The position numbers and the translations under genes are program-made. From positions 144,808-208,807 of the IMG/VR virus record IMGVR_UViG_3300042566_001512: a stretch of 64,000 nt of DNA. One strand, 5' to 3'. This document shows positions 21,269 through 48,034 of the stretch, one piece after another (the stretch's first letter is position 1; each line of letters starts with the position of its first letter). The notes below the pieces were generated by a model. It did not search any database and was not told where the DNA came from. It saw only the letters and a list, made by a program, of their open reading frames with translations.

Positions 21269-21931
21269 ATGTCTAATAGACAGCAAACAGAAAACTTCAT
21301 AATTGAATATATATCAAAATTGACAGGGCCTGTAAACGTTGGCCTTTATAAAAATAAATTTTCTAAAATGTCAGATGAAGAGTTTGACTCTTTTATGCGA
21401 GATTTGAGAGACAAAAAACAAAGACTGTGTGTCATTGATGCTAACTTTGGTCCAGAGAGACTGAGCGTAAAAAACAACATACAAGTCGCAAAAGAACTAG
21501 GAAAATCATTATTTCAGAGAGTGTGGGTAACTCAAGAACCCGGAAAGCCTTCTTATCTTACCCCCAACGAATACATAGTGACTATAATGCCTTTGAGAAG
21601 GCAGGCCCAGCTACTGTCAAAAAAGGTATCTATACCAGAAGACAATAATTCGGTTGATGATTTTACTGGTCAGCCAACTGGTAAATCAAAGGGTAGTAAA
21701 ATATCCTATCCCGAGACACAGGTACTTGCGTCTTTTGGTTTAAACAACTCTATTACTGAGCTTCTAAAGTATAGAGGGGGTGACGAGCGAGGCTTTGCCG
21801 CCATGAACACCATGATAGATCGCACCGGCCAAGTAAATCTAAAAACCATTGAACCTTATGCGGGCGGAGTAAAGTCTACCCAAACACTAAAGAGCCTCAT
21901 GACGGCGATGCACTTTAATGTCACAATTTAA
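21269..21931 (+). CDS. virion RNA polymerase beta C-terminal subunit (phiKZ gp149-like)
   Basis: RRQAQLLSKK, TGQPTGKSKGSKISYPETQVLAS, ELLKYRGGD match the beta C-terminal region (GQR.GEME..AL....L.ELLT.KSDD equivalent). Confidence 0.85.
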   Translation: MSNRQQTENFIIEYISKLTGPVNVGLYKNKFSKMSDEEFDSFMRDLRDKKQRLCVIDANFGPERLSVKNNIQVAKELGKSLFQRVWVTQEPGKPSYLTPNEYIVTIMPLRRQAQLLSKKVSIPEDNNSVDDFTGQPTGKSKGSKISYPETQVLASFGLNNSITELLKYRGGDERGFAAMNTMIDRTGQVNLKTIEPYAGGVKSTQTLKSLMTAMHFNVTI

Positions 21932-32961: not shown

Positions 32962-35900
32962 TTAAGCAGACTTTCGCATAGAAACAGGTGCAGACGGAGG
33001 TTCGTATTTACGACCATCGCTTTTGCTAGTGGGTACATTAGCTGTTTCTTTTGCGGCGCTTACAGTGTTTATCTTATCGTATATCAACTTCATTATGTCC
33101 AGAGTCTCCTTATGTACAATCAGGGATTGTGCCAGTAAAGATTCTGTATTGACCATAATGTCGGCAGTAAGGGTGTTTTTAGCCGCGTTATTATTTTCAG
33201 TAGAGGTACCTGCTACTCTAGGGTTTACTCCCACTGCGTCGTTAAGCGGGGAACTGCTTGCTTGCTTACTTGCCTGTACGGCCTTTTCCTGCTGTGCAAT
33301 AGGCCTGACTTTAGGGTTATATGAGGACTTCGGTCCTTCTATTTGAGAACTGGCCAGTTGTTCGGGCGGTAATCTTGGCGGCTGCTGCGCCGCAGCGGGC
33401 ATTACATAGTCGCCATTTATTTTTGGAGAAGAACTTACAGCGGACACTACTCTTACGAAGTCCTCTCGGGCTCCGCTAGACTTGTTGCTCCCAACTCCAG
33501 CGTAGTAGCTTCTTCCGGTTTTATAAGGTAGGCTGGCCCATTCTTTGCTGATATTGTCAGCAAATTGACCGGCGTCAATTTTTCCCTTTACGTAGTTATC
33601 AAGCCCTCTCATCTTTAATAACCCCACGGCCAACTTGTCCTGGGTCACGGGATTAAAAATGTCAGTTGCTTTTGCGTATCCGGCCTTAATTAGTCCGCTT
33701 AGAGTTTTTCTTATTATTTGATATTTTCCTACCGCAGTAGATTCGTGACCTCTAGCGATCATGTCTTTTTGGTAATCAGATACCTCTGCGATTGACATCT
33801 TTGTCAGGTTAGGTTCGGTTTTCCCGCCCACTAATATATTGTAATTTCCGTTACTTTCTTTTTGACCAATAAATTCCAATAAGGTATTTGTTGCGGGGTC
33901 AAAAGTCTTAACAGGTTCTCTCTTTATGTCGGCAGTCATAAGTCCTGAATCTTTTCTCGACTTCATCACTTGACTGGCTCCGTCGTCGTACTTGGGGTCT
34001 TTATCCTTAGATACGATCGAGGTACCTAGAGTGTTGTTTTGTGCATTGTTGTTTAGGGCCGGAGCGTTATTCGATGCCCTACTTTTATCCACTGCGACTT
34101 CTTTTGAAGTGGAAGCCGTGTCGCTCTTAAGTGGGGTAGAGTCGGCCGGTTTTGTCTTGGCCACATAATCGTGCTGTGTCTTTTCTTTGGCGCGCTCTGC
34201 AAGATACTCCAGGTTACCTTCTACACTAGAAGAATCGGTGTTTACCTGATACCCGGGCCACGGAGAATCAGTTACACTCCAAACTCCATTTATGGAAGAG
34301 ATTGTCTTAGCAACCTGAACAATTTTATTTGGACTTATAATTACAGGCGCTTCAGCTTTAGGCGGCTTTCCCGTTTCTGTTATATGCGCGGTTACGTAGT
34401 TGAGGTAAACTGGCAAGAATCTGTCTCTAAACCACTTACCCCAAGAAACTGCTGCCGGCCCAAATAAATCAGATATACCAAAGTAAACGTTCACCTTCTG
34501 AAGTAATTCGTTGAAATTATCATCAAAAGTAGCTTTGGTACCTTGTATCTTAATTAACTTACTAGTTTCGTTTTCTAGTTTATTTAGAGCTATTACCTTA
34601 GACAGCTCCAGTTCCTTAATACCGTATGTTTTATATCTGATTGCATCAAAAGCAGAAACGGTATTTTTTAATATAGTAGAACCCACAGTGGACGCACCGG
34701 TAACTGCGGTACCTGAGGGCTTTGCTTTTTCATCCGGTTTTCCAAGATCCACTCTAACGGCAGTGTTAGCGGCCTCTTGTGGAGGCTTTACGTCGGTGGG
34801 TAATCCAGTTGCCGTCTTTTTAGCATCGCCAGCTGGGGTAGCGAATTCTTTTAGTGCCGCCTCTATTGCTGCACTTACGTCCGCCGAATCTGAGGCCACG
34901 TACTTGCCTCCCAATATTGGAAGAGTCCCTGTTTTATAAGGACCGCTGGGGAATTTAGTAGCTTCTATGTATTTTAATTTAACGTCCTTCTTTAGGTCAT
35001 TTATTTTAGATAAGTCAATACTGCCATTTAAAATGGACAGCGCACTTACGTGAGTAAGGTAGACGGGTTTAAATCGTTTAATGTACCATGTGCCAAATTG
35101 TCTCTTGTGGTCATTATCCTTAGAAGAAAAACCGAATATTGACATCATCTCCTCAATGTCTATTTTCTTTTCTTCTAACTCCGCTTTTTCCGAACCCACT
35201 TTAACGAATTGTTTTAAATATTCTTCTAGATCTACTATTTTGCTAAAGTAGCTAGTTTCTTCTTTTTTAAAGCCGTATTGAACATAGCGTATGTTATCGA
35301 GCACTGTGGGCTTACTCATCCATCTGCGAACGGCTTTATAGCCCTTATAAGCACCGTAACCGACGGCAGCGGCACCCAGTATACCAAGGGTCACTGGAGA
35401 GCTTACAACGGCCGCTAGACCGGCTCCTAAGGCACCTAGTGCACCGGTAGCAGCCGCGCCCACGCCACCGGCGCCAGCTACCGCGGTAACGGCACTTCCG
35501 GCTAGACCGGCCACTCTTCCAATTCCTAAAAGTTTGCCTAGCCCGCTTAGTACTCCTCCGCCCTTCAATAGAGTTTTAAAGCCGCCCAAGAAACCGGTGA
35601 TGGCGTCAAGAGCACCGGACAATAGGCCGATCAATCCGCCCTTCTTGTCTTTTTCCTTACCAGGCTCAGCCGTTTTAGAGGACTGCTGCTTTGCTCTTTC
35701 TGCGTCTCTTCTGGCTTTTATATCTTCCCATGAACCTTCACGGTCACCGTCACCGTCTCGGTCGCCTTTTACTTTCTTTTCTGCGAAGAAGTCCGTAAAA
35801 GTATTTTTGATGTCACCCAGAAGGGAGACGGTCTGTTCGCCGGTGGTAGCTTCTTTATCTTTTTTATTTTTTATTGAGGAATTTGGCTTTATAGCTTCGC

Positions 35901-38900
35901 TTACGTTGAGCTTTACTCTTCTGCTAAACAACTTGTTTAATTTCTTAAACCCAGAAATTATTTTTGCAGAAGTAGAGGTCTTCAAAGGTTTTCCATTTTG
36001 ACCTAACAAACCTTCGTCTATGTCCTCGTTGCTCAAAACCATGGTTTCTTCTTTCTGGTCCCAAACAGGTCCGTCAATGTCGGAGACCAAAGAAATAATC
36101 TTTCCGGTTTTCTCAGATATGTATCTGCCGGCTTTCATGAGTGCCGCTCTTAGTCTAGGCTCAGGCTCACCCTTTACATATACGTCCTGTGGCTTACTGA
36201 GGTAGCGTATAAAACCACCTGCAACTTTAGCAGTGGCTCCGGCCAAACCCCTGGTTATTAACTTGGTTAACTTCAACCCCTTTTTCATTGTCCAGGCAGC
36301 TGCGGAGGTGAGTTTATTCATTATCCATTTTGCTGGTTTAAATGGATTAAATATGCCAAGCATAGAGTTATAAACACGCAAGTTTGGTAAGTCCTCGTCA
36401 AAGATTTTGACGTTACCTGCGGCGTCAACCACTTCGCCATTTATGTCGTTTTGATGATATATGGGCCTTCCGGTTGACCTGTTAAAGTACTCTCCGTTTC
36501 TTAGCCTGGTTGCGTATAGTCTAGGCTCCGGTTCGTCACCCGCGTATACGTCTTTTACGCTATATGGACCTGTCCCCATCGTAAGTTTTGCTAAATTTAT
36601 GCCAAATTTAGCGCCCTTTGCCAGCATTCTGAAGTTAAACTTTGTAAGCGGTATACCTATTTTGTTATAGTACCAAGAAACTCCGCCTATTACTTTTCCT
36701 GCTAGTTTTAATAATTTCCTAATAGGCGCAAATCGCTTTTGCCTGCTATCGTATACCACGAGGCTGTCTAGTTCTTCTACCGATACAACTGACCTGCCTT
36801 TTTCATCCTTTACCTCGCCTTGGATTTGTTCGGGTAAATAAATAGTCTTTCCAGAAATTGCGTCAGAGTAGTGGCCTTGTTGCATTTTAACTGCTGTCAT
36901 TCTGGGGTATTTTTCACCACCGACCCAAACGTCTTTGGCGCCGCCAAAAGCTACGCTTTTGAACATGTCGACAGTGTCCTTTACACCTGTCCAGGCCCTT
37001 TTTAAAATATCTACTGCTACAGATCCGGCCTTTGTGTTTTTTATATTTTTGGCTATTCCGTCAAATGTACCTTTTGCATAGTCGCCAAATCTTTTATACT
37101 GGCCGTCTTTATCTTTTACGTATGACTGATCAAGTTCATCGGATTTCAGTACGGTTTGTCCGCTTACGATGTCCTTAACGGTTCCGTTTATGTCAGACAA
37201 GGTTTTTACTATTTTTCCAGACGCCAGATCCACGTAGTGTCCCGCCTGTAGTTTAGCTTTTATGATTCTGGGGTTTTCTTCGCCCGAAACTCTCAAATCA
37301 ACCCATTTGTCTTTGAGAGTAAATGAGAGCTTTTGTATTTTGTCCTTTATCTCAGAATACGATTTACCAGAATAACCATCCTGGTTATTTCTTTCTTTAG
37401 AATCGTTTAGTTTGGTGGAAACTTTTCCTAGATAATTTTTAAATTTCCCGTATTGGCCGGATACTCTTTTACCTACATTGGCCTCGCTTATTTTTTGCTT
37501 TTGCTTCTTAAAGAAAAGTTTAGCTTTTGTAAACTGAGTCTTTCCTTTGTTTAATATATCTCCGGCGGGGCCGTTACTGTTTTCTTTGTTTACTTTATCT
37601 TTTTCTTCAAACTTACTGGCTTTGAACAAATCTGTAATTTCTTTGTAATAGCCTATAGAAGTGTCTAGTCTCTGTATAATTTGTTTAAAATAAACTTCAC
37701 AGTCTTGATCTTTCTTAGATAAAGGCGAGTAGTCGGATCTGGTAAATGAAGAAGTACCAACAGAAGAATAATCCGCAGAGGAAAAGGAGCCGACTCTACT
37801 GGAGACTTTGTCTGGCGCAACTGTGGGTTTAGAGATACCGGTTTTTTGCTTACGCACATTAGGCATCCGGCGCTTTTTGCCGATTTGGCCTTTGTAGAAG
37901 TCTTCCATGTCAAGATCATAACCTTCTTCTTTTCTGGTTATAATCCCAAGCTGAACCAGCTCGTTTTGTCTACCTTCCGATATAAGCTGCTCTATGGTAG
38001 CCCTAGGGTCGTTCATGCCTCTTACCAGGGAGTTCATCTGTCTATTGAGCAACAGCATTTCACTGGGCTTACTTTCCAAGTCGGACAAGTACTTACTTGT
38101 CAGTTCCTTTGGTCTTCCCTCCAAGCCCTTTTCCAGCTTAGATGACTGCATTTTATTTTTCAGGAAGGCCTGTTTTATGCTTATTCTTTCTTCCTCACTG
38201 AGTTTGTCCTCTGACTGAGAATCTATTTTATCTATAATTTTATCAAGGATGTCGTTTGTTCTTTTGGCATCATTGTCGTTGTATACTCTTGAGGCTATGC
38301 TCTTGAGTAATTTCGTTTTCCCAGTAAATCTGCCCTTGTCTTGATCGTACTCCACTCTGTCTATGTTTGGATTTCCCGTACGAATAATTTGAATTTCTTG
38401 CAAAATTCTAGACAAATATCCAGGTATAATTTCGTTGATGGATCTTTCGGTTTTCAGTGTAAACGGCTGTACAGCGCTTAAGTCTTTACCCGTGAGTCTA
38501 TTAAAACTACTGTCCACGTTTAGGGACGGCAAGATAGACTGCAGGCCGCGCATGATCCAGGCGCCTATGCCTTCTTTATTCGACCACGAATCGTCCTTCC
38601 TGAAATTTTCCGCGCTCCCTACTATATTTTCATTAAAGTTTTCTAGGTAATCCCCAACCTGCTCCACCTTAGGAAATACCTTTTTGATAGGTTCTTTAAA
38701 GCGCTTAGCAACACTGTAACCTACCGTGTTTGCCAAAAGGTCACCCGCGATCTCGCCACCTGTTTGATAAGTATCAAGCATGCCGGGCGCTACCTGTTCA
38801 CGAGCCATCTCAGCATCAGTAAGTCCAGATCTGAATCCCTGGGCATTTCTTTTTATAGTTTCTATAGTTCTATCTCGTATTTTACGAGTAGTCATTTGTA

Positions 38901-39828
38901 GATATTCGTCTGCGCTGGGCAATAGACCTCTAAAAGCAGTGCCGACAGTATCCGAGAATTTACCGAATAGTTTCTGACTGCTAAGTTCTTTTAGATTTAT
39001 TTTTTGCCAATCAGGAAGACCCGTGTTTTTAATTAACTTATTGTAAGCGTCTACGTGCAGTACGTGGGTTTTATTTACGGTCTCTAGTATGTCGTACTGA
39101 GCGAACAGCTGACGGTGCTGTAACTCAAGAGATTTTTTCTGATATTGTAGATTAATAGTGGTTTGATATTGTGATATCCTGGATAAGGACATCGCGGATT
39201 GATTTAACAGACTAAAGATGTCACGGTGTCTGTTTAGCTCAATACCTTCTTTTATTAGATCTTGACCTTCGTTCTCTATCTTATTATTTTCGGACTGTAC
39301 TATTTGTTCTTTGAATACTTCTGCAAGCTGTATGGATATTGCCGAGTCTCTTTGATCTCTGGCAGACAGGGCGGAACCTAGTTTTTGTTCATCCTTGGCT
39401 TCGTCCTCCCAGCGCTTAAAGATATCCTTTAATCTGCCGGGTATAAATTTACTATCCTTTGGTGCAAGCTTGGAAGCTACTCTTTTAAAGTCCTTTATGG
39501 CCGGCCGTACTTCTGCCGCTGCTTCACTATAGAGCTGCCTTAAATTCGTGGCAACCTTATCCCCCATGTCTAGTGTGTCGCCGTACCCTTTTGGCAGCAA
39601 TTCCCGCAATACACCAGTTATAAAAGAAGGATCGCTTACTTTGGCCTTTATCCCGCTTTTTAATCCGTCTTTAACTTTTGTGGCTGGTTTTCTATCGTCC
39701 TTAAAAGGATCAGCCTGAAAATCTATGTCGTCAAAAACGAGTTCATTATCAAAATCAAAACCGTTATCTAATGTGTTTGCTACTTTCTTACCCTTAGACA
39801 TGATTTTTATCTTTCTGTGAAAAAACAC
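32962..39828 (-). CDS. tape-measure protein / tail-associated lysozyme (phiKZ gp181-like)
   Basis: 2288 aa; Gly/Ala-rich membrane segment; C-terminal lysozyme-like KESNGNYN...AVGKYQII...QDKLA...EWASLP; divergent from vRNAP beta'. Confidence 0.88.
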   Translation of the reverse strand: MFFHRKIKIMSKGKKVANTLDNGFDFDNELVFDDIDFQADPFKDDRKPATKVKDGLKSGIKAKVSDPSFITGVLRELLPKGYGDTLDMGDKVATNLRQLYSEAAAEVRPAIKDFKRVASKLAPKDSKFIPGRLKDIFKRWEDEAKDEQKLGSALSARDQRDSAISIQLAEVFKEQIVQSENNKIENEGQDLIKEGIELNRHRDIFSLLNQSAMSLSRISQYQTTINLQYQKKSLELQHRQLFAQYDILETVNKTHVLHVDAYNKLIKNTGLPDWQKINLKELSSQKLFGKFSDTVGTAFRGLLPSADEYLQMTTRKIRDRTIETIKRNAQGFRSGLTDAEMAREQVAPGMLDTYQTGGEIAGDLLANTVGYSVAKRFKEPIKKVFPKVEQVGDYLENFNENIVGSAENFRKDDSWSNKEGIGAWIMRGLQSILPSLNVDSSFNRLTGKDLSAVQPFTLKTERSINEIIPGYLSRILQEIQIIRTGNPNIDRVEYDQDKGRFTGKTKLLKSIASRVYNDNDAKRTNDILDKIIDKIDSQSEDKLSEEERISIKQAFLKNKMQSSKLEKGLEGRPKELTSKYLSDLESKPSEMLLLNRQMNSLVRGMNDPRATIEQLISEGRQNELVQLGIITRKEEGYDLDMEDFYKGQIGKKRRMPNVRKQKTGISKPTVAPDKVSSRVGSFSSADYSSVGTSSFTRSDYSPLSKKDQDCEVYFKQIIQRLDTSIGYYKEITDLFKASKFEEKDKVNKENSNGPAGDILNKGKTQFTKAKLFFKKQKQKISEANVGKRVSGQYGKFKNYLGKVSTKLNDSKERNNQDGYSGKSYSEIKDKIQKLSFTLKDKWVDLRVSGEENPRIIKAKLQAGHYVDLASGKIVKTLSDINGTVKDIVSGQTVLKSDELDQSYVKDKDGQYKRFGDYAKGTFDGIAKNIKNTKAGSVAVDILKRAWTGVKDTVDMFKSVAFGGAKDVWVGGEKYPRMTAVKMQQGHYSDAISGKTIYLPEQIQGEVKDEKGRSVVSVEELDSLVVYDSRQKRFAPIRKLLKLAGKVIGGVSWYYNKIGIPLTKFNFRMLAKGAKFGINLAKLTMGTGPYSVKDVYAGDEPEPRLYATRLRNGEYFNRSTGRPIYHQNDINGEVVDAAGNVKIFDEDLPNLRVYNSMLGIFNPFKPAKWIMNKLTSAAAWTMKKGLKLTKLITRGLAGATAKVAGGFIRYLSKPQDVYVKGEPEPRLRAALMKAGRYISEKTGKIISLVSDIDGPVWDQKEETMVLSNEDIDEGLLGQNGKPLKTSTSAKIISGFKKLNKLFSRRVKLNVSEAIKPNSSIKNKKDKEATTGEQTVSLLGDIKNTFTDFFAEKKVKGDRDGDGDREGSWEDIKARRDAERAKQQSSKTAEPGKEKDKKGGLIGLLSGALDAITGFLGGFKTLLKGGGVLSGLGKLLGIGRVAGLAGSAVTAVAGAGGVGAAATGALGALGAGLAAVVSSPVTLGILGAAAVGYGAYKGYKAVRRWMSKPTVLDNIRYVQYGFKKEETSYFSKIVDLEEYLKQFVKVGSEKAELEEKKIDIEEMMSIFGFSSKDNDHKRQFGTWYIKRFKPVYLTHVSALSILNGSIDLSKINDLKKDVKLKYIEATKFPSGPYKTGTLPILGGKYVASDSADVSAAIEAALKEFATPAGDAKKTATGLPTDVKPPQEAANTAVRVDLGKPDEKAKPSGTAVTGASTVGSTILKNTVSAFDAIRYKTYGIKELELSKVIALNKLENETSKLIKIQGTKATFDDNFNELLQKVNVYFGISDLFGPAAVSWGKWFRDRFLPVYLNYVTAHITETGKPPKAEAPVIISPNKIVQVAKTISSINGVWSVTDSPWPGYQVNTDSSSVEGNLEYLAERAKEKTQHDYVAKTKPADSTPLKSDTASTSKEVAVDKSRASNNAPALNNNAQNNTLGTSIVSKDKDPKYDDGASQVMKSRKDSGLMTADIKREPVKTFDPATNTLLEFIGQKESNGNYNILVGGKTEPNLTKMSIAEVSDYQKDMIARGHESTAVGKYQIIRKTLSGLIKAGYAKATDIFNPVTQDKLAVGLLKMRGLDNYVKGKIDAGQFADNISKEWASLPYKTGRSYYAGVGSNKSSGAREDFVRVVSAVSSSPKINGDYVMPAAAQQPPRLPPEQLASSQIEGPKSSYNPKVRPIAQQEKAVQASKQASSSPLNDAVGVNPRVAGTSTENNNAAKNTLTADIMVNTESLLAQSLIVHKETLDIMKLIYDKINTVSAAKETANVPTSKSDGRKYEPPSAPVSMRKSA

Positions 39829-39906: not shown

Positions 39907-42334
39907 ATGGATAAACTGGACGTGCCTTTTAACATATTTTTTCTTAGACTAGACGAGCTTACCGTTAAGTACCTCAAGCCCGTGACTTCCCTTGACGTCT
40001 TTGATGGCCTTACTAAAAACCTCCATCCGGATGGATTATATTCGCCATCCATATTCGGCGTGGTTGGAAGTAATAATAGATACACAAAATTCTCCTATAT
40101 AGACATAAAGGTAAAAATAATGCACCCGGTGTATTATAAAGCAATTACCTCTATGAAATCATTATACGAATCCATAATGACCTCAAAAGAGTTTGCGGTC
40201 TGGGACCAGGAAAAAAAGGACTTTGTAAAGTCAAACGCGTTGGCAGGGCAAACCGGTTACGACTTCTTTATACAGCACTGTGATAGCATAGTGCACGAAG
40301 AAAGACCGTCTACCGATAGACAGGAAAACATATCACTTATAAATAAATATAAACAAAATTATTTATACGATAAAATCATCGTACTTCCGGCGGCATATAG
40401 GGACATTGAAATAGATGACAATGGAAGAGAATCCTCAGATGAGATAAATTCGCTTTATTACAAAATCATAGCGATATCAAACACAATAAACATTAACACC
40501 GTAAGAATCTCACCTGAAGCTTACAACACCCAGAGAATGTCCCTGCAAAGAGCATTCAACGACACATACGAGTATCTCTCTAACCTAATTAGAGGAAAGA
40601 GTAATCTCTTTATGGGCAAGTGGGCGTCTCGAAAAATATTTAACGGGACTAGAAACGTAATTACCTCAATGAACGTTACTCAAACTGAGCTAGGAGCACC
40701 CAATTCAATAAACTACAACGACACGCTTGTTGGGCTGTACCAAACTTTAAAAGGCATTTTGCCAGTAACGTTATACAGATTAAAAACTGGGTTTTTATCT
40801 GGAGTATTTCCATCAATAAGCTCACCTGCTCTATTGACTAATAAGACAACGTTAAAATCAGAAAAAGTTGTTTTAAAGACTGCCATATATGACAAGTGGA
40901 TGACCAATGAAGGATTGGAGTCACTTATTAGCTCTTATAAAGAACCATCAATCAGACACGACTATGTCACAGTGGACAACTATTATCTAGGTTTAATTTA
41001 TAGGGGGCCGGATAATACTTTTAAATTGATACACGGAATAGACGAACTTCCTGAGGACAGAGATCCAAAAGACTGCAGGCCTATCAGCTTGACGGAGTTA
41101 TTTTATTGTTCAATCTACGAAATTACGGACAATTACCCAGCACTAGTAACGCGGTATCCAGTAACCGGAGTCGGTAGCATATACCCGTCTATGGCTAAAT
41201 TAAAATCAACGATAGAAGTGGAAAAGAGATATAAGCTAGGGGTAGACTGGACTGTAGATCCACAATCTAAAGTGGCCTACGAATTCCCAACTCAAACTGA
41301 TTTATTCAGTGCTCTGTCTCCCCATCCTTTTAAACTAGGTAGACTTTCAGCTGATGGTTTTAAATGTAAGACTATATAAAACGGTTTTACATTTTAATCA
41401 CGTCCTGTTTTGCAGAAATGCGAAATAAGATTCTTCCTTAATTGCTGGGACATCTTGACACGTTAAAAGCTACAACGTAATGCGAAAGCATAGGCGCGAA
41501 TGCTTGAAAATTTTAACGTAAGACAATCAGCAGCGAAGCTCCTGCTCCCCGCCTAAACGGGAAAGGAGAACGTTCAACGGCCAGCCCTTAAGCAAGGGGT
41601 AGGAGCAAGTGCTCCGAAATGGGAAGCGCCTTACCAGCAATTGCTAGGAAGGTGAAGATATGGTCTTACCTGCATGGAGACATGCAGCGGCTTCTAATGG
41701 AAAGCCGGTAAGCGAGGTAACGTGCGCTTATTGAAAACACGTGTTCGACGGCGATTAAAAGTTATATTAACCCTCAATACCCTCGGGTTAAAACGAGTTA
41801 ATTTATAACACAAAAAGGTTGCCTATTCGCAGTAATGTGAATATAAAAAAATCTCTCTAATTGCTGGGACTCCTCGTTAAACCACTAAGACTACAACGCA
41901 GCGCGAAAGCGCAGACGTGAGAGTTTGAAAACATTAGTGGGTAGAGACAATCAGCAGCTAAGACCCTTACTGCATATAAATTGCAAATGGGTAAAGTTCA
42001 ACGACTAGATCGAAAGATCGTACCGTGTCAAGTGACGCGGGAAACGGGAGACTCCGGTTTTTACCGGATGAAGATATAGTCTTGTCTATGCGGAGACGCG
42101 TAGCTGTGGGATAGCATTTACTTCCCTTTAAAACGAAACAGGTTAACGCCCCTGTTTGAAAACCTAACGACAAGTAGTTGTAACTTCCTCTACTCCGAAG
42201 ATTCTATTAAAGAAATTTATGATTTTTTTAATAACACTCGGTGCTACGTAGGAACTGATGGAAAATTTATTAATAGTTTAGAAATAGATACGGTTAAATA
42301 CGTTTTACATAACCTCACAGGAGAACCACAATAA
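39907..42334 (+). CDS. virion RNA polymerase beta' catalytic subunit (phiKZ gp180-like), spliced: exons 39907-41355, 41744-41755, 42170-42334 (541 aa)
   Basis: HPDGLYSPSIFG, GKWASRKIFNGTRNVI, LVTRYP; splicing restores RLSAD|FDGD|TSSCN containing the DxDGD Mg-binding motif; stop overlaps the beta ATG. Confidence 0.93.
41356..41743 (+). ncRNA. group I intron 1 (388 nt, no ORF)
   Basis: P AATTGCTGGGA 41440, Q AATCAGCAGC 41525, R GTTCAACGGCCA 41572, S AAGATATGGTC 41655; 5' exon ends in U, intron ends in G. Confidence 0.92.
41744..41755 (+). other. 12-nt micro-exon encoding FDGD
   Basis: TTC GAC GGC GAT between two group I cores. Confidence 0.9.
41756..42169 (+). ncRNA. group I intron 2 (414 nt, no ORF)
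   Basis: P AATTGCTGGGA 41859, Q AATCAGCAGC 41949, R GTTCAACGACTA 41996, S AAGATATAGTC 42071; ends ...CCTAACG. Confidence 0.92.
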
Positions 42335-45300
42335 TGAATAATCAACAAGTTTTTTATAAAACATACGGAGTTAGAAACGTAAATGAACTCGCTTCTCCTA
42401 GACTTTTTGATCTAGTAGAATTTGTGTTTCCTTTTAACAGCATAATGCACTATGCGACTTATGACTCCATTGAGAACGGCCCGCCTGGTGACTATCCGCT
42501 GTTTAACCAAATAAAGAAACCGATATACTTTAAGACAATAAACGAAATATCTGCTTTTAATGGCAGCCCAAGGCTGCAGGCCATAAACACGCAGGAACTA
42601 GTTAGGGATTACAGAAATAACAATAGGCGAATGAAGTTACTGCAGGGAGAGGTTCAAAACGTATCGGACCCTACTGTATTAACCGTATTTAATTACTGCA
42701 TATTAAATAAACAATACAAATATGCCCGCAACTTATTTACGGACTATCATCGCTGGAAGAATATATTTACAACAGTTATAGACACTTTAGTAAATAGACT
42801 TTCTAGCCCACAAATAAACCACTATATACCGCTGACTATACCGGATATAATACCTAGCATGATTCAGTTAGATTTGGCCTCCAAAGGGCTTAATCAGTCG
42901 AACCTAAAAGTATTCAAAGACAATAATAGTTTTATGCTTTTAGAGTTATGGAAGTGGCTCAATCCTGCGACTAGTTCTGATAGTCTTTTTAGCAAAATAC
43001 CTATTAACAGAATTCATCTAGTTAATCTGGTTTATATTAAAAGAAACAAGTGGTGCGTTTTAAATTTAGGCGTAATAAATAGCTTTAAGGAAGTCAGTGG
43101 GGACGCCCTTAAACCAGAAAACACACCAATTGTGCTATCTAGGGTGAAGCTCAAATACGTTCAGATACAAAAACGTATACTGAACATGATGATGACCATA
43201 GAGGCCGGATCAGTTGTGGCCGTGGATATTCCCGAGGACATTAAACTGGACGTTCCCGATCAAACGGTAGAAGAACCCGATATCTATTCAGATTACCAAG
43301 AACAAGAGGTAACCACAGAGGCCCCTGTTAAACAAAAGCCTCCTCTTACTGATAAAGAATTACTGGTTCTTCAAGAAAAAGCTAATCAGTTATTATCCGT
43401 AGAAGATGATGACGATCAAGAAATAATAGATCAAAAGATCAAGTTACAAGATCTAGAACTAGACCAAAGACTAGATCAACTTAATGAAATTAACCAAAGA
43501 AAAGAAAATGAATTACAGACAATAGAAAACTCTACTATTTACGACGTTCTTAATGAACAAGAGCCGTCCCTTTATAAATTAGTAGAAAACATGTGCGACA
43601 GGTTAGCAGATAACAACATGCTAACTGCAGCGGAATATAAAAGACTAATTAGGTTGGCCGGTTCCTATAAGACGATAACTTCAAAGGACGGTAAAAGTAC
43701 TCTAGAAGAATACGTCAAAATACCACCAGAAGATCTGGTGGTGCAGGACGTAGTTAACATACCGGATTCTCCGGCAATTGTTGATAAAACGATGCTAAAA
43801 TCTTCTTTGCAGTCATTTACTTCCGACTATGTAAAAAAGGACATAATCGGAAAAGACACTGCATCGATGGTGATCGCGATTCAAAAATCTGGAATGATAG
43901 TCACAGATTACAAGGTGGAAAAATACGAAAGTATTTTAGGTGCGGAAGAAGAGCATACGTTGAGGATTGTACCTGTAGAAGGAATCCCATCGACCATCAG
44001 ATTTAAAGTTCCAGTAGTAAACGAAGACGGTACCTTTGTGGCGTCCGGCGTCAAATATAGACTAAGAAACCAAATAGGGGATTAAGATTTATAAAATATC
44101 GCAGAACATACTTTTGCGATAGTGACAAACAATGTGTTGTCTAAAAGGTCCCCGTGCTGCAGAAACGCCGCACAAGTAAACCTACCTAATTGCGGGAAAA
44201 CGCCATATCTAAATAGCTACCACTTATACCCAGAAACGGAGTATAAATACCTGCGGGGTAATGTTCCAGACAGGCAAGGTAAAAACGCTATTAAGAGGCA
44301 TAACCGACGCAGCAAAGCCCCTAAATGCCAAAAGCGGCACATTGGGGTGGGCTCAGAGGCCATCGAAAGCTATTGCGCCAGCGCATAATAACATTCGTGT
44401 AAAGTCGAATGGTCACTATTAGCATTAGTGATTAAAGCAAGTAGAGTAGGGGCGTTTATTCGCTCCGAAACGGTAGGCACCTAACGGCACTAAACGGCTC
44501 AAGGTGAAGATATGGTCCACATGGATGAGTGCTACCCATCCGCAAAATTGATTACAATAGAGTAAGCCTAACAAGCTACTATGGAAAAACTTTTATAAAC
44601 AGATCTCGAAAGCGAGCAAACGATTACGGCACCTGGATTCAAAACGCGGTGATGGCCAAAGCGCTTAATAAGGAAGACAAAGACATTACCGATTTGTTCA
44701 CGGCAAACGTATTCGATAACACGTTAAAAGCACCAAGAGCTTACACTGGTTTATCCATGTATTTTAAATCTTTTAAGGTAAAAGATTACGTACTGATGCT
44801 AGATCACAAGGTCATAAAGAGCACAGTAAACGATAAAATACTAAAGAAGTACGAAACCGACTCAAGTGTGGTGTGCGGTTATAAAAACTCTGATTTGTTA
44901 GTAATGGATAAAAACAACGCCATTTACAAAATCAAAGATGATCAATTGGAGTTCATATCCAGCATAGAGGATTTCCTTAACATAGACAGCAGCGCTGCTC
45001 CAGTGGAGTATGCCGAAGTAGTCATAGGCGCTAAAGATATACCCGTTGGCGTCGTTCTCAGCTATTACATAGGTTTTACAAAGCTACTTAAGCTTCTTAA
45101 TTTAAACCCAGTCAGAGTAGAGGCTGGAAAACGAGTGAATCTACAACCCAATGAGTTTTCTTTGGTGTTTAGTGACGAGACTCTCGTATTCTCCAGAGAC
45201 GATAGATTATCCTCTTTAATAGTGGGTGGATTCTTGGAGTATCACAAATCCATTAGAGCGTTCAACGTCCACAGCTTTGATAAAAAGGGCGTGTACGTTA

Positions 45301-48034
45301 ATTTGCTGGAGTCTAATAAACTAGGAACCAGATATATACGTGAGATGGATCTAATGCAGCAAATGTTCATAGATCCAATAACTAAAGAGATATTAAAAGA
45401 CATGAAGGAACCAACAACGTTCAACGGTCTTTTAGTTAGAGCATGCGAGCTATTGATGGATGATAAACACCCTCAAGAGTTAGATACGAAGTACATGCGA
45501 ATAAAGGGATACGAAAGAATACCTGGGGCCGTTTATAGGCAACTAGTTGCAGCTATACGCCAGCACAATGCGCAGTTAGGCAAGGCATCCAAGCAAATGA
45601 CACTCGATCCTTACGCAATATGGCGCTACATTACAGAGGATCCGACTAAGGTTCAGATAAGTGAGATTAATCCTATTCAGGCACTTAAAGAAACCGAAGC
45701 CGTAACTTTTTCAGGAACGGGCGGCCGTAGTAGCCGAAGCATGGTAAAAAGCACAAGAGCTTACCACAAAAACTCTATGGGCACTATTAGCGAGTCCACC
45801 GTTGACTCCTCTGATGTAGGTATAAATATCTACACTAGCGCCAATCCGCAATTTAATTCTTTGCGAGGAATATCCAGAGAATTTGATTTTGAGAAACAAG
45901 GTGCCACTAGCTTGCTATCCACCTCCGCAATGCTGGCACCGGCATCCGACAAAGATGATTAATAGTTTATTACAAAAATAAACTAATGGTCCGACAGATC
46001 AGCGATGATCAGTTTGTAATCTCCTTAATTGCTGGGACTCCCTTATAGCCGTTTTACTACAATGATCACGAAAGTGAGTCATGACAGTTAGAAAACAAAA
46101 CGGATTGGGTAATCAGCAGCGAAGCCTCTTTAAAATGAGGAACGTTCAACGACTAAGATCTTATCAATCTGTACCTGCAAAGTGTGGGGAAACGGGAGAC
46201 TGCTCCATCAGGAGCAGAAGATATAGTCTCTTCTGCATTGAGAGATGCAGCTGCGCAAACGCGCGAGTTAGATTAACGAACTAACTGAAGGTAAAGCCAA
46301 AACGAGTAAACTTAAAATGCTCCCTTTGAGAGTAATCTCAATTGAAAAACTTCTCTAATTGACAAGAAGTCCCTTATAGACAATTGACTACAGCGTGACC
46401 GGAAACGGTGAGCGTGAGAGTTTAGGACGATTGTATTGGGTAACTTGCAGCGAAGCTCCTATAAAAACGGAGAACGTTCATCGACTAGACCGTAAGGTCG
46501 TACACTCAAGTGAGTGGAAACGGGAAGCTCCTTTAGAAAAACTAAAGGATGGTGACATAGTCAGTTCTGTAGTGAAAGTTACAGCGGGTCATGTTTGGCC
46601 GGCATCGACGAAAAACTAGTCGATGTGAACATAAAGAAATTTTGTAGCCATACAACAAGGTCACTCCATAGCTTGCGACGGGTACCATCAGCCAACGGTG
46701 AGAACCGGCTACGATCAAGTGGTGGCTCATCGCTCCCATGATCTATTCGCAATAACCGCCACAAAACCAGGAACGGTATTGTCCATCAACAAAAAGGGCA
46801 TAGTGGTAGAATATGCAGATAAAACAAAACAAGGATACGAGCTAGGAAGGCGATTTGGTAATGCGGCAGGTTTGGTAATACCGCACGAAATAGTAACCGA
46901 TCTTAAAGCAGGTCAAGAGTTTGAAATCGGTGAGGCCATTTGCTATAACTCCGGGTTCTTTGAGCCGGATTTCTTTGATCCTAAGAGAATAGTTTTAAAG
47001 AATTCATTCAACGTAAGAACGGTTCTTTGGGAATCGCTGCAGACCTTAGAAGACGCTTCTTCTATTACAGAAAAGACTGCTAATAAACTAGTCACCTCTG
47101 TGACTAAAGTAAAGAACGTTTTGGTTTCGTTCGATCAGACTGTCAGTAATTTAGTAAAGATAGGAGAGAAGGTGGACTACGACACCGTCCTTTGTTATAT
47201 TCAGGACAGTATTACTGCTGGAAATAAACTTTTCACAGACGAAACCATAGACACATTAAAAATGCTAGGTGCCCAATCCCCCAGGGCGCACGTGCAAGGC
47301 GTTGTAGAGGCCATTGAGGTTTACTATCACGGAGAGAAAGAGGACATGTCCGAGTCTCTGCTGGAGCTATGCAACGAAAGCGATAAACGTCTGAAATATG
47401 TGGCAAATAGTCAAGGCAAAAAATTCATGTCGGGAAGCGTGGACTCCGGCTTCCGGATTGAAGCCAATCCTCTTGCTCTAGACTGCGTCGCTATAAGAAT
47501 CTACATTACTACGAAAGCACCCGCTGGAATTGGCGATTAGTTTTTAGTCCTGCTACGATGAAAATCGTAAACAGTTTTCTCCTTAATTGCTGGAAACTCT
47601 TTTATAAAAAAAGACAATCAGCAGCGAAGCCTCATTCCCAAAAAAATGAGGAACGTTCAACGACTATCCCGTAGCTGGGAGTAGGGTCATGTGGCCCCAA
47701 ACAGGAGATATCTTCGGGTCTTAACTGGCCAAAGATAAAGATATAGTCTAGTCTATGCGGTGACGCGTAGCTGCGAAATATAAAAAGTCGCAGGATTGGG
47801 TCTAACGAACCCAATCTAATAAAAACGAAAGGCGTGTTTGCTAACCAGATGAAGACAGTTTTTAGTGAAACTATAAAGCAGAGTTACAAAACTGAAGACG
47901 GAAAAGAAATAGACGCGGTTTTTGGTGCAAAGAGTATCGACGACCGTATCGTTAACTCCGCAGTTATAATTGGCACGGCCAATGCCACTCTTGACATTAT
48001 TACTGATAAAGCAGTAGAGATGTATTTTTCTTAA
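42334..48034 (+). CDS. virion RNA polymerase beta subunit (phiKZ gp178-like), spliced: exons 42334-44082, 44532-45959, 46297-46307, 46637-47537, 47828-48034 (1431 aa)
   Basis: Splicing restores IGD|LPIRKI, KDD|PKRV|NFVAIQQGHS and GIGD|KGVFANQMK; exon sum 4296 nt = 1432 codons; AGGAG SD. Confidence 0.92.
44083..44531 (+). ncRNA. group I intron 3 (449 nt, divergent core)
   Basis: P AATTGCGGGAAA 44188, Q-like AACCGACGCAGC 44302, R GCTCAGAGGCCA 44351, S AAGATATGGTC 44507; P3 CCTACC/GGTAGG. Confidence 0.85.
45960..46296 (+). ncRNA. group I intron 4 (337 nt, no ORF)
   Basis: P 46027, Q AATCAGCAGC 46111, R GTTCAACGACTA 46144, S AAGATATAGTC 46218; ends ...GTAAAG. Confidence 0.92.
46297..46307 (+). 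other. 11-nt micro-exon (CCA AAA CGA GT, PKRV)
   Basis: Needed to rebuild DDPKRVNF in frame; ends in U and is preceded by G. Confidence 0.85.
46308..46636 (+). ncRNA. group I intron 5 (329 nt, no ORF)
   Basis: P AATTGACAAGAA 46357 covaries with Q AACTTGCAGC 46442; R GTTCATCGACTA 46476; S GTGACATAGTC 46552; ends ...ATAAAG. Confidence 0.88.
47538..47827 (+). ncRNA. group I intron 6 (290 nt, no ORF)
   Basis: P AATTGCTGGAAA 47585, Q 47616, R GTTCAACGACTA 47655, S AAGATATAGTC 47738; splits GD|K. Confidence 0.92.

What the first reader, a model, noticed from the sequence alone, without database searches (positions are those of the whole stretch)
39907..48034. Six ORF-less group I introns in the adjacent virion RNA polymerase beta' and beta genes
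Seen: the ORF track breaks these genes into fragments. The gaps hold six 290-449 nt elements, each with P/Q/R/S core motifs in order, a 5' exon ending in U and an intron ending in G. Helices covary between copies: P7 GACTA/TAGTC versus GGCCA/TGGTC, P4 GCTG/CAGC versus CAAG/CTTG, P3 CTTCC/GGAAG versus CCTACC/GGTAGG. Extra helices between P7 and P3' suggest IA-like introns. Removing them gives 541-aa and 1431-aa subunits with intact motifs. Known: single endonuclease-carrying group I introns occur in phiKZ-family RNAP genes. Inference: six endonuclease-free introns (about 2.2 kb) in one vRNAP operon is an unusually dense ribozyme array; six splicing events would be needed to build the packaged polymerase.
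Basis: partly seen in the sequence, partly recalled or inferred. Interest (0 to 1): 0.92.

Follow-up and report, generated by a model that had tools for sequence, protein, structure and literature searches.

The report
Six group I introns in vRNAP genes
Two adjacent virion RNA polymerase genes of an uncultivated phiKZ-like jumbo phage are interrupted by six endonuclease-free self-splicing (group I) introns, two pairs of which leave only 12- and 11-base exons between them; this is real and the fullest case found here, but it is an extreme example of a known phenomenon rather than a new kind of element.

Summary
Six RF00028 (group I intron) matches lie on the + strand: five score 77-102 bits and one scores 47 bits (E 9e-10). 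With splice sites fixed against intron-free relatives, the introns are 388, 414, 449, 337, 329 and 290 nt, 2207 nt in all. Every 5' exon ends in U and every intron ends in G. Removing them gives stop-free 541-aa (beta'-N) and 1431-aa (beta) products.

One is 12 nt and encodes FDGD of the catalytic NADFDGD loop. The other is 11 nt and encodes PKR plus two bases of the next codon.

Core helices, including the P7 pseudoknot, P7.1/P7.2 and the P1 exon-guide pairing, covary across 34 related introns.

The same six sites recur in relatives, which carry 0-5 introns, often with HNH endonuclease genes. The window has all six filled and no endonuclease. Introns cluster by site, so these are six separate lineages.

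Two of the sites were already known: S1 in phiKZ gp180 and S4 in PhiPA3, 201phi2-1 and HPP-Temi. Multi-intron phage genes and small exons between introns are also published.

Verdict: a real and functional-looking feature, and a new, extreme member of a known kind. Splicing itself is untested.

The parts
32962..39828 (-). Divergent neighbour: homologue of the phiKZ gp181 giant tail-associated lysin or fibre (context only)
   Evidence: phrog_3201 at E 3.8e-253. Synteny with phiKZ gp181.
39907..41355 (+). Gene 1 (vRNAP beta' N-terminal half, phiKZ gp180 homologue), exon 1, 483 codons ending ...LSAD
   Evidence: phrog_2986 at E 2.6e-171. Aligns to residues 1-483 of the L008 protein. A profile of homologues hits RNAP beta'/RpoC1 chains with the DFDGD loop aligned.
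41356..41743 (+). Intron 1 (site S1, AD|FDGD), 388 nt, no ORF
   Evidence: RF00028 at 83.6 bits. Same site as the phiKZ gp179 intron and an unannotated intron in RTH11. Its P1 is weak, with only 3-4 bp.
41744..41755 (+). Micro-exon 1, 12 nt TTCGACGGCGAT, encoding FDGD (second and third catalytic Asp of NADFDGD)
   Evidence: It is the only way to restore the invariant motif. The same isolated 12-mer occurs with synonymous changes only in L005 and L009.
41756..42169 (+). Intron 2 (site S2, FDGD|T), 414 nt, no ORF
   Evidence: RF00028 at 88.8 bits. P1 is GGCGAU|U paired with G-GUUGCC, and it covaries with GGAGAU:GUCUCC in L009. It is 84% identical to the L010 S2 intron, which carries a 445-aa HNH gene in its P1 loop.
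42170..42334 (+). Gene 1 exon 3 (54 codons plus stop). The stop overlaps the gene 2 start (TAATG).
   Evidence: Aligns to L008 residues 488-538 and RSF1 residues 488-537.
42334..44082 (+). Gene 2 (vRNAP beta, phiKZ gp178 homologue), exon 1, 583 codons ending ...NQIGD
   Evidence: phrog_3148 profile positions 4-574. tblastn.
44083..44531 (+). Intron 3 (site S3, GD|LP), 449 nt, no ORF, the most divergent of the six
   Evidence: RF00028 at 47.2 bits, E 9e-10. Its orthologue in L006 scores 61.1 bits. P1 is GGGGAU:GUCCCC and covaries with GGUGAU:GUCACC in L006. The site is empty in L007, L009 and L010.
44532..45959 (+). Gene 2 exon 2, 476 codons, LPIRK...DKDD
   Evidence: phrog_3148 profile positions 575-1050. 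Aligns to L008 residues 584-1060.
45960..46296 (+). Intron 4 (site S4, DD|PKR), 337 nt, no ORF
   Evidence: RF00028 at 86.7 bits. Same site as the PhiPA3 gp210 intron (PMC11620839) and as ORF-less introns in 201phi2-1 and HPP-Temi. The site is empty in L006, where the flanks are identical.
46297..46307 (+). Micro-exon 2, 11 nt CCAAAACGAGT, encoding PKR plus the first two bases of a Val codon
   Evidence: L006 reads GATGAT CCAAAACGAGT without interruption. L007 and L009 have the same isolated 11-mer, with a synonymous change in L009.
46308..46636 (+). Intron 5 (site S5, phase 2, PKRV|N), 329 nt, no ORF
   Evidence: RF00028 at 77.5 bits. P1 is GAGU:GCUC and covaries with GGGU:GCCC in L009 and GCGU:GCGC in L012 and L013. 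Orthologues in L006, L009 and L012 carry HNH genes of 472-531 aa.
46637..47537 (+). Gene 2 exon 4 (901 nt), ...NFVAIQQ...PAGIGD
   Evidence: phrog_3148 profile positions 1075-1354. Aligns to L008 from residue 1066.
47538..47827 (+). Intron 6 (site S6, GD|K), 290 nt, no ORF
   Evidence: RF00028 at 101.7 bits. P1 hairpin is GAU|UAG paired with UUA-GUC. The site is empty in L006. Orthologues occur in L007, L009, L010, L012 and L013.
47828..48034 (+). Gene 2 exon 5 (68 codons plus stop), KGVFANQMK...
   Evidence: phrog_3148 profile positions 1358-1420. Aligns to L008 residues 1365-1430.

Best explanation
The region holds the two adjacent virion-RNA-polymerase genes of a phiKZ-like jumbo phage. Gene 1 is the beta' N-terminal half (gp180 type) and gene 2 is beta (gp178 type). 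Each gene is interrupted by bona fide subgroup-IA-like group I ribozymes, two in beta' and four in beta.

The mechanism below is inferred from the family. An exogenous guanosine attacks after the exon-terminal U, which is held in a U.G wobble in P1. The freed exon then attacks after the intron-terminal G. Six such reactions per operon transcript are needed to restore the reading frames.

The insertion points sit beside invariant catalytic residues: NAD|FDGD|T in beta', and GD|LP, DD|PKR, PKRV|N and GD|K in beta. Because sites S1/S2 and S4/S5 lie 12 and 11 nt apart, the middle exons are micro-exons. Each micro-exon must serve as the 3' exon of one ribozyme and the 5' exon (P1 substrate) of the next.

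The evolutionary reading is also inferred. Each site hosts its own intron lineage, spread by site-specific HNH homing endonucleases that are still present in relatives. This genome has collected all six lineages and lost every endonuclease gene. It keeps the ribozymes because imprecise loss from these motifs would destroy an essential enzyme. An occupied site is also expected to be a poorer target for the matching endonuclease of co-infecting relatives.
For: Shown by tool results:
- Full-length RF00028 matches at E 1e-18 to 1e-26 for five introns and 9e-10 for the sixth.
- On 34 related intron cores, RNAalifold recovers P2-P9 with compensatory double changes in 45 of 53 pairs.
- The P7 pseudoknot is canonical in 170 of 170 cells, against 37-67 of 170 in slid controls, with U-A to C-G exchanges.
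- P7.1 and P7.2 covary.
- P1 has a U.G wobble, and the exon and guide sequence covary at S2, S3 and S5.
- Every 5' exon ends in U and every intron ends in G, and the joined products are stop-free at 541 and 1431 aa.
- The junctions are gapless against intron-free L008 and RSF1, and match empty-site alleles at the DNA level.
- The micro-exons recur in L005, L007 and L009 with synonymous differences only.
- The insertion points flank invariant residues.
- Introns cluster by site: 70-82% identity to same-site introns elsewhere, against 46-63% among the six.
- HNH genes sit in orthologous introns at S1, S2 and S5. Intron 2 equals the L010 intron minus its HNH gene.
- Gene identity rests on phiKZ synteny, homology and the DFDGD alignment.
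Against: - No RNA data exist, so splicing, its order and its efficiency are untested.
- Intron 3 falls 3 bits short of the Rfam gathering score.
- The P1 of intron 1 has only 3-4 bp.
- No convincing P10 pairings were found.
- The RF00028 alignments end 46-66 nt before the splice sites inferred here. For introns 2 and 6 that tail is in frame and stop-free, so an upstream 3' site cannot be excluded from this sequence alone.
- ONT-cappable-seq did not detect splicing of the homologous phiKZ intron under the conditions tested (PMC10914365).
- The immunity idea and the order of endonuclease loss are inference only.
Confidence: 0.85

Rival explanations
1. One or more of the six elements is a decayed ribozyme that can no longer splice. 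On this reading the vRNAP genes are pseudogenes, from a defective genome or from a phage that relies on another polymerase.
For: Intron 3 scores below the Rfam gathering threshold. Intron 1 has a weak P1. All endonuclease genes are gone, as expected late in the homing cycle. No RNA evidence exists.
Against: All core helices are intact and covary. The exons keep every invariant motif with no frameshift or stop. The micro-exons show synonymous-only change between genomes. Orthologues of intron 3 keep a covarying P1. The same architecture is found in several independent assemblies.
Confidence: 0.05
2. The true 3' splice sites of introns 2 and 6 are the G residues where the Rfam model ends (42103 and 47770). 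That would give in-frame insertions of 22 and 19 aa rather than the gapless junctions proposed here.
For: The 66-nt and 57-nt tails are multiples of three and contain no stop in the exon frame. The Rfam consensus places the terminal G there.
Against: The insertions would fall inside FDGD|T and GD|K, next to invariant residues, and no homologue has them. Orthologous tails are mostly out of frame or contain stops, yet they end ...AACG just before the conserved exon codon. The other three tails in the window are out of frame. Every tail has the same build of two hairpins plus an A-rich single strand ending in G.
Confidence: 0.05
3. The tandem intron pairs are used for regulated exon skipping. [quoted passage not shown] This would control the amount of active vRNAP rather than being mere tolerated parasitism.
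For: Exon skipping between neighbouring group I introns has been seen in Twort orf142 and in phage SIOphi, where 47% of transcripts were affected (PMC11878797). Skipping micro-exon 1 would stay in frame because it is 12 nt.
Against: Skipping micro-exon 2 (11 nt) would shift the frame. Close relatives with only one intron of each pair (L006, L007, L010) manage without any such device. Nothing in the sequence demands it.
Confidence: 0.08
4. The array is an assembly artefact, that is, a chimeric metagenomic contig stitching intron-bearing alleles from several strains into one molecule.
For: The source is a metagenome-derived viral contig. Intron content differs between closely related genomes.
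Against: L009 carries five of the six introns on one independent contig, and L007 and L012 carry four. Both tandem pairs occur elsewhere. The exons flanking all six introns are collinear and equally diverged from relatives. The gene 1 exon 1 protein is recorded on two contigs.
Confidence: 0.02

Closest known systems
PhiPA3 gp210 intron in the vRNAP beta gene gp211/209 (Birkholz et al. 2024, PMC11620839)
   Same: Same gene family (phiKZ gp178 homologue) and same insertion point as window intron 4, immediately after the two conserved Asp (E. coli RpoB D675 equivalent). It is a group I type.
   Different: PhiPA3 has a single intron carrying an active HNH nicking endonuclease. The window intron has no ORF and is one of four in the gene.
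201phi2-1 gp273/274 and HPP-Temi vRNAP beta genes
   Same: Each has an ORF-less group I intron at the same DD| site (RF00028 at 87.4 and 70.5 bits). The 201phi2-1 record already annotates a joined CDS interrupted by a mobile element, and the protein was detected in virions.
   Different: One intron per gene, no micro-exon, and no introns in beta'.
phiKZ gp180/gp179 (predicted intron-encoded endonuclease, Mesyanzhinov 2002 as cited in PMC10914365)
   Same: A group I intron (92.2 bits) at the same AD|FDGD site as window intron 1. The annotated gp180 stops at 490 aa, exactly like the window ORF, and the FDGD... exon lies in an unannotated gap.
   Different: phiKZ carries gp179 inside the intron and has no second intron after FDGD. 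Splicing was not seen by ONT-cappable-seq.
Multi-intron phage genes: Twort orf142 (three introns, exon skipping), Bastillevirinae DNA polymerase, terL and rNDP reductase (PMC11878797)
   Same: Several group I introns in one essential gene. phiNIT1 has a small exon between two introns. Exon skipping has been observed.
   Different: These involve different genes and phage families, and at most three introns per gene are reported. No case was found of a micro-exon encoding part of a polymerase catalytic loop.
Jug huge gut phages (PMC12880540)
   Same: Huge phages with very high loads of short ORF-less group I introns, about 18.5 per genome, in essential genes. Some are confirmed by metatranscriptomes.
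   Different: Unrelated phage group. The genes affected are terL, nrdD and DNA polymerase, with 2-3 fragments per gene.
T4 td, nrdB and nrdD introns (subgroup IA2; from general knowledge)
   Same: Phage group I introns with P7.1/P7.2 and 3' P9 extensions, and with an in-frame stop close to the 5' splice site.
   Different: T4 has one intron per gene. No subgroup model was available here to test IA2 membership.

Membership tests
Group I intron (Rfam RF00028) | Covariance-model match at or above the curated gathering score (50 bits) | tested here: met
   Five of six score 77.5-101.7 bits. Intron 3 scores 47.2 bits at E 9e-10 over the full model, and its orthologue in L006 scores 61.1 bits.
Group I intron (Rfam RF00028) | Conserved core P3-P8 with the P3/P7 pseudoknot, supported by covariation | tested here: met
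   45 of 53 pairs show compensatory changes on 34 sequences. P7 is canonical in 170 of 170 cells, against 37-67 of 170 when slid.
Group I intron (Rfam RF00028) | 5' exon ends in U, paired as U.G with an internal guide sequence (P1), and the intron ends in G | tested here: met
   All six have the U and the G. P1 with U.G is clear for introns 2-6 and covaries with the exon at S2, S3 and S5. Intron 1 has only 3-4 bp.
Group I intron (Rfam RF00028) | Guanosine-dependent self-splicing | not testable with these tools
   Needs in vitro transcription and splicing, or RNA sequencing.
Subgroup IA group I introns | Extra helices P7.1/P7.2 between P7 and P3' | tested here: met
   Two covarying hairpins at alignment columns 363-365/444-446 and 450-463/469-476. 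Inserts at that position are visible in the CM alignments.
Subgroup IA group I introns | Best match to a subgroup-specific model (for example the GISSD IA1, IA2 and IA3 models) | not tested
Mobile (homing) group I intron | An intron-encoded homing endonuclease gene | tested here: not met
   There is no ORF of 150 aa or more in any window intron, and no tblastn match (all E > 0.05) to nine HNH proteins from orthologous introns. Orthologues at S1, S2 and S5 do carry HNH genes.
phiKZ-type virion RNA polymerase (gp180 beta'-N, gp178 beta) | Sequence homology and gene order gp181-gp180-gp178-gp177.1-gp177-gp176-gp175 | tested here: met
   PHROG families 2986 and 3148. phiKZ aligns over its full length to the L008 orthologues. 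Window gene order matches the phiKZ record. The beta' DFDGD loop aligns to solved RNAP structures.
phiKZ-type virion RNA polymerase (gp180 beta'-N, gp178 beta) | Protein packaged in the virion | not testable with these tools
   Inferred from the phiKZ and 201phi2-1 record notes (structural head protein, detected by mass spectrometry).
Chimalliviridae (nucleus-forming jumbo phages) | Chimallin shell protein homologue | not tested
   Only 64 kb of the 208.8 kb contig was available, and no chimallin query was run.

The most novel reading that the evidence does not exclude
The vRNAP genes of this uncultivated phiKZ-like clade may be a battlefield of at least six homing-endonuclease and intron lineages aimed at different catalytic motifs. 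On this reading, the window phage is a fully 'vaccinated but unarmed' genome. Every target is split by a ribozyme, so none of the circulating HNH nucleases can nick its vRNAP genes in a mixed infection, which is the interference mechanism shown for PhiPA3 against phiKZ. The price is six obligatory splicing events, including accurate use of 12- and 11-nt exons shared between neighbouring ribozymes. Separation of transcription from translation in a phage nucleus could be what makes such a load tolerable. The array would also be a living example of the 'enhanced intron mobility' proposed to have split jumbo-phage RNAP genes (PMC7598289).
Probability: 0.3. Interest if true: 0.65.

Novelty: new member of a known kind. 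Interest (0 to 1): 0.45.

Why it matters
This array offers a natural test bed for three questions.

1. How do group I ribozymes handle exons of only 11-12 nt that are shared by two introns? Open points are the splicing order, P1 against P10 competition, and exon skipping that would delete two catalytic aspartates.
2. Do ORF-less introns protect essential genes against the homing endonucleases of competing phages? This would extend the PhiPA3 and phiKZ interference model to a multi-site arms race.
3. Did intron invasion contribute to the fragmentation of jumbo-phage RNA polymerase genes?

There is also a practical point for annotation. Gene callers truncate these subunits. phiKZ gp180 itself is deposited as a 490-aa protein lacking FDGD, and RTH11 has the same problem. 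Of the 120 retrieved gene 1 homologues, at least 40 break at site S1 or S2.

Tried and rejected
- Megablast of the region against 50,697 phage records found nothing. Pfam found nothing in any exon. Single-sequence PDB searches of three exons found nothing. Only a profile of homologues reached RNAP beta'.
- Taking the Rfam hit ends as splice sites was rejected. The 102 nt between hits 1 and 2 has stops in all frames, and there is room for only about 4-5 residues between the flanking exons.
- Two earlier placements of micro-exon 2 (46251-46269 and 46264-46274) were each gapless against RSF1. Both were rejected once L006, L007, L009 and L010 showed the CCAAAACGAGT string at 46297-46307.
- An unrestricted search for P1 partners up to 2.2 kb downstream gave spurious long-range matches. 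It was replaced by the homologous guide position.
- No convincing P10 pairing was found.
- The viral-contig scan returned only the window's own source contig.
- The 9-mer AAAACGAGT is shared by the P1 loop of intron 2 (41790-41798) and the micro-exon 2/intron 5 junction. It was considered as a relic of intron transposition, but about 0.5 chance occurrences are expected in 128 kb, so it was left unresolved.
- The count of structure pairs was not used. It needs a typed 566-character structure string, so P7 was counted by script instead.

Full report
OBSERVATION. Rfam finds six full-length matches to the group I intron model RF00028 on the + strand between 41.3 and 47.8 kb, and nowhere else in the 64-kb window. 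Five score above the gathering threshold (77.5-101.7 bits). The sixth, at 44094-44529, scores 47.2 bits with E 9e-10. PHROG profiles place those pieces collinearly on two families. phrog_2986 (539 positions) covers gene 1. phrog_3148 (1424 positions) covers gene 2 at 4-574, 575-1050, 1075-1354 and 1358-1420.

EXACT ANATOMY. The Rfam hit ends cannot be the splice sites. The 102 nt between hits 1 and 2 has stops in every frame, and intron-free homologues leave room for only 4-5 residues. I used as references the uninterrupted genes of Ralstonia phage RSF1 (538 and 1473 aa) and of a metagenomic relative, L008 (538 and 1433 aa, 60% identity). I also used relatives that lack individual introns.

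Gene 1:
- exon 39907-41355
- intron 1, 41356-41743 (388 nt)
- micro-exon 41744-41755 (TTCGACGGCGAT, encoding FDGD)
- intron 2, 41756-42169 (414 nt)
- exon 42170-42334

Gene 2:
- exon 42334-44082
- intron 3, 44083-44531 (449 nt)
- exon 44532-45959
- intron 4, 45960-46296 (337 nt)
- micro-exon 46297-46307 (CCAAAACGAGT)
- intron 5, 46308-46636 (329 nt)
- exon 46637-47537
- intron 6, 47538-47827 (290 nt)
- exon 47828-48034

All 5' exons end in T and all introns end in G. The joined frames give 541 and 1431 codons without stops. Five of the six 5' splice sites follow a GAT (Asp) codon, and four introns open with an in-frame TAA or TAG.

THE RIBOZYMES ARE REAL.
- I aligned the six cores with 28 related ones: 26 from relatives, plus RTH11 and phiKZ. 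RNAalifold recovers P2, P3, P4, P5, P5a, P6, P6a, P7.1, P7.2, P8 and P9, and 45 of 53 pairs are kept through double changes.
- That program cannot draw the P7 pseudoknot, so I counted it by script. It is canonical in 170 of 170 cells, against 37-67 of 170 when the partner strand is slid by 1-3 columns. It shows U-A to C-G exchanges in 8 sequences and C-G to U-A in 2.
- The helices between P7 and P3' are the IA hallmark. No subgroup model was available to go further.
- Downstream of the Rfam hits, introns 1, 2, 4, 5 and 6 each have a 46-66 nt tail. It folds into two hairpins followed by 10-12 unpaired A-rich bases ending in G, a P9.1/P9.2-type extension.

EVIDENCE THAT THE SPLICE SITES ARE USED.
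- P1 helices with the U.G wobble are found for introns 2-6. Examples are GGCGAU|U with G-GUUGCC, and GGGGAU|U with G-GUCCCC.
- At the homologous guide position the exon and guide change together between genomes. At S2, GGCGAU:GUUGCC becomes GGAGAU:GUCUCC in L009. At S3, GGGGAU:GUCCCC becomes GGUGAU:GUCACC in L006. At S5 the pairings are GAGU:GCUC, GGGU:GCCC (L009) and GCGU:GCGC (L012, L013).
- The isolated micro-exons recur in other genomes and differ only at synonymous positions.
- Intron-minus alleles in relatives match the window's joined flanks. S4 is identical in L006.
- Weak points: the P1 of intron 1 has only 3-4 bp, no P10 was found, and the tails of introns 2 and 6 happen to be in frame and stop-free. 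Orthologous tails are mostly out of frame or carry stops, yet they end ...AACG before the conserved exon codon. I therefore keep the downstream sites.

WHAT THE GENES ARE.
- The order of the window genes matches phiKZ gp181, gp180, gp178, gp177.1, gp177, gp176 and gp175. In the window these are the giant lysin/fibre on the opposite strand, gene 1, gene 2, a roughly 65-aa ORF, a 484-aa ORF, a 242-aa virion protein and the head protease.
- phiKZ gp180 and gp178 align over their full length with the L008 orthologues.
- A profile of 21 intact gene 1 homologues hits RNAP beta' and RpoC1/gamma chains (E 2e-5), with the DFDGD loop aligned.
- Gene 1 is therefore the beta' N-terminal half. Its last exon 1 codon is the first catalytic Asp, and the 12-nt micro-exon carries the other two.
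- Gene 2 is beta. The literature equates phiKZ gp178 D1072 with E. coli RpoB D675. That residue is the second D of DD|PKR, which is site S4.
- All six insertion points abut invariant residues in family alignments.

COMPARATIVE PICTURE.
- A search with exon 1 found 890 homologues in metagenomes. Of the 120 retrieved, at least 29 stop just after ..AD (site S1), at least 11 stop just after ADFDGD (site S2), and at least 56 are intact.
- I fetched ten relatives, at 52-88% protein identity, and scanned them.
- Occupancy: L009 has S1, S2, S4, S5 and S6. L007 has S2, S4, S5 and S6. L012 has S1, S2, S5 and S6. L006 has S2, S3 and S5. L010 has S2, S4 and S6. L013 has S1, S5 and S6. L014 has S3 and S4. 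L011 has S1. L005, whose contig is cut, has S1 and S2. L008 has none.
- The cultured Xanthomonas phage RTH11 has an unannotated S1 intron.
- The window is the only genome sampled with all six sites filled. Both micro-exon arrangements exist elsewhere.
- Orthologous introns at S1, S2 and S5 often carry HNH genes of 445-531 aa. The window has none, and no remnant of one. Its intron 2 is 84% identical to that of L010 apart from about 1.4 kb of HNH gene in the P1 loop.
- In a tree of 33 cores the introns group by site. Each window intron is 70-82% identical to same-site introns elsewhere, but only 46-63% identical to its five neighbours. The array is therefore six lineages collected in one genome, not a recent burst within it.

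WHAT IS ALREADY KNOWN.
- phiKZ gp180 is deposited as 490 aa. It is interrupted at S1 by a 92-bit group I intron containing gp179, and its FDGD... exon is unannotated. The intron was predicted in 2002, but splicing was not detected by ONT-cappable-seq.
- PhiPA3 has an HNH-bearing intron at S4, and its nuclease nicks phiKZ gp178 and gives a competitive advantage.
- 201phi2-1 and HPP-Temi have one ORF-less intron at S4. The 201phi2-1 record already joins the CDS, and the protein was seen in virions.
- In the 60 best cultured-phage records, no beta gene has more than one insertion.
- Up to three group I introns per gene, a small exon between two introns, and exon skipping are described in Twort and Bastillevirinae. 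Huge gut phages carry about 18.5 short introns per genome.
- I found no paper describing several introns or micro-exons in chimallivirus-type vRNAP genes. I also found none describing sites S2, S3, S5 or S6.

MECHANISM AND EVOLUTION.
- Shown: intact, covarying group I cores at six conserved sites, a functional-looking P1 at most of them, and exact restoration of both proteins.
- Inferred from the family: guanosine-initiated two-step transesterification. All six events are needed, because without S1 and S2 splicing the enzyme lacks two catalytic Asp, and without S4 and S5 splicing the frame is lost.
- Inferred from the distribution: each lineage spread by its own HNH endonuclease, and the endonuclease genes were then lost here. 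Occupied sites are probably protected from nicking by relatives' endonucleases, by analogy with PhiPA3 and phiKZ.
- Speculative: tolerance of such a load may be helped by uncoupled transcription and translation if the phage forms a nucleus (not tested). The array also illustrates the intron-mobility idea for the origin of split jumbo-phage RNAP genes.

VERDICT. The feature is an extreme, fully loaded and endonuclease-free member of a known phenomenon, with two catalytic-motif micro-exons as its distinctive point. Its interest is moderate. It is worth a splicing experiment and a clade-wide survey, but it is not a new kind of system.

Noticed in passing
L016 (phiKZ NC_004629) 10182-10358 minus strand, record about 186181-186357; ribozyme at L016 10397-10718, record about 186396-186717: The deposited phiKZ gp180 (490 aa) ends at ...LGAD and lacks FDGD. 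The rest of the protein (FDGDTVSFN...) lies in an unannotated gap after a 92-bit group I intron that contains gp179. The reference annotation of this vRNAP subunit is therefore truncated.
   Followed up: partly
L001 (Xanthomonas phage RTH11 OQ790161) 3864-4187; exon 2 from about 4255: There is an unannotated group I intron (68.9 bits) at site S1. The second exon is hidden inside a 69-aa 'hypothetical protein' (WJJ55173.1). A 433-aa ORF follows before the beta gene.
   Followed up: partly
L005 16020-17489: A 489-aa ORF with a DUF723 match starts inside the beta gene near residue 635 of a close relative (88% identity). This may be a seventh insertion site or a different kind of mobile element. 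The contig ends soon after.
   Followed up: no
window 42104-42169 and 47771-47827: The 3' tails of introns 2 and 6, between the end of the Rfam match and the inferred splice site, are 66 and 57 nt long. Both are in frame and stop-free, so use of the upstream G would give in-frame insertions of 22 and 19 aa.
   Followed up: partly
window 41756, 44083, 45960, 47538: Four of the six introns begin with an in-frame TAA or TAG directly after the exon's GAT codon. Same-site introns in relatives and in phiKZ do the same. A ribosome on unspliced RNA would stop at once.
   Followed up: no
window 41790-41804 compared with 46299-46313: The P1 loop of intron 2 contains AAAACGAGTTAATTT, which resembles the micro-exon 2/intron 5 junction AAAACGAGT|AAACTT. 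It could be a relic of an old transposition or a chance match. About 0.5 occurrences of a given 9-mer are expected.
   Followed up: partly
window 21269-21931 (+): A separate, uninterrupted 220-aa gene matches a small 'RNA polymerase beta subunit' family (phrog_3233, E 1.5e-75). It is probably another fragment of one of the phage's split polymerases.
   Followed up: no
L012 1454-2620: A free-standing GIY-YIG endonuclease gene lies just beyond the giant lysin gene that neighbours the vRNAP operon in a 54%-identity relative. It is a different nuclease family from the intron-borne HNH genes.
   Followed up: no
window 41400-41700, 44100-44400, 46500-46800: The introns are slightly richer in G+C (0.41-0.46) than the surrounding exons (about 0.36-0.42).
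   Followed up: no
window 1-64000: No tRNA or tmRNA genes were found in the window, and no Rfam family other than RF00028.
   Followed up: yes
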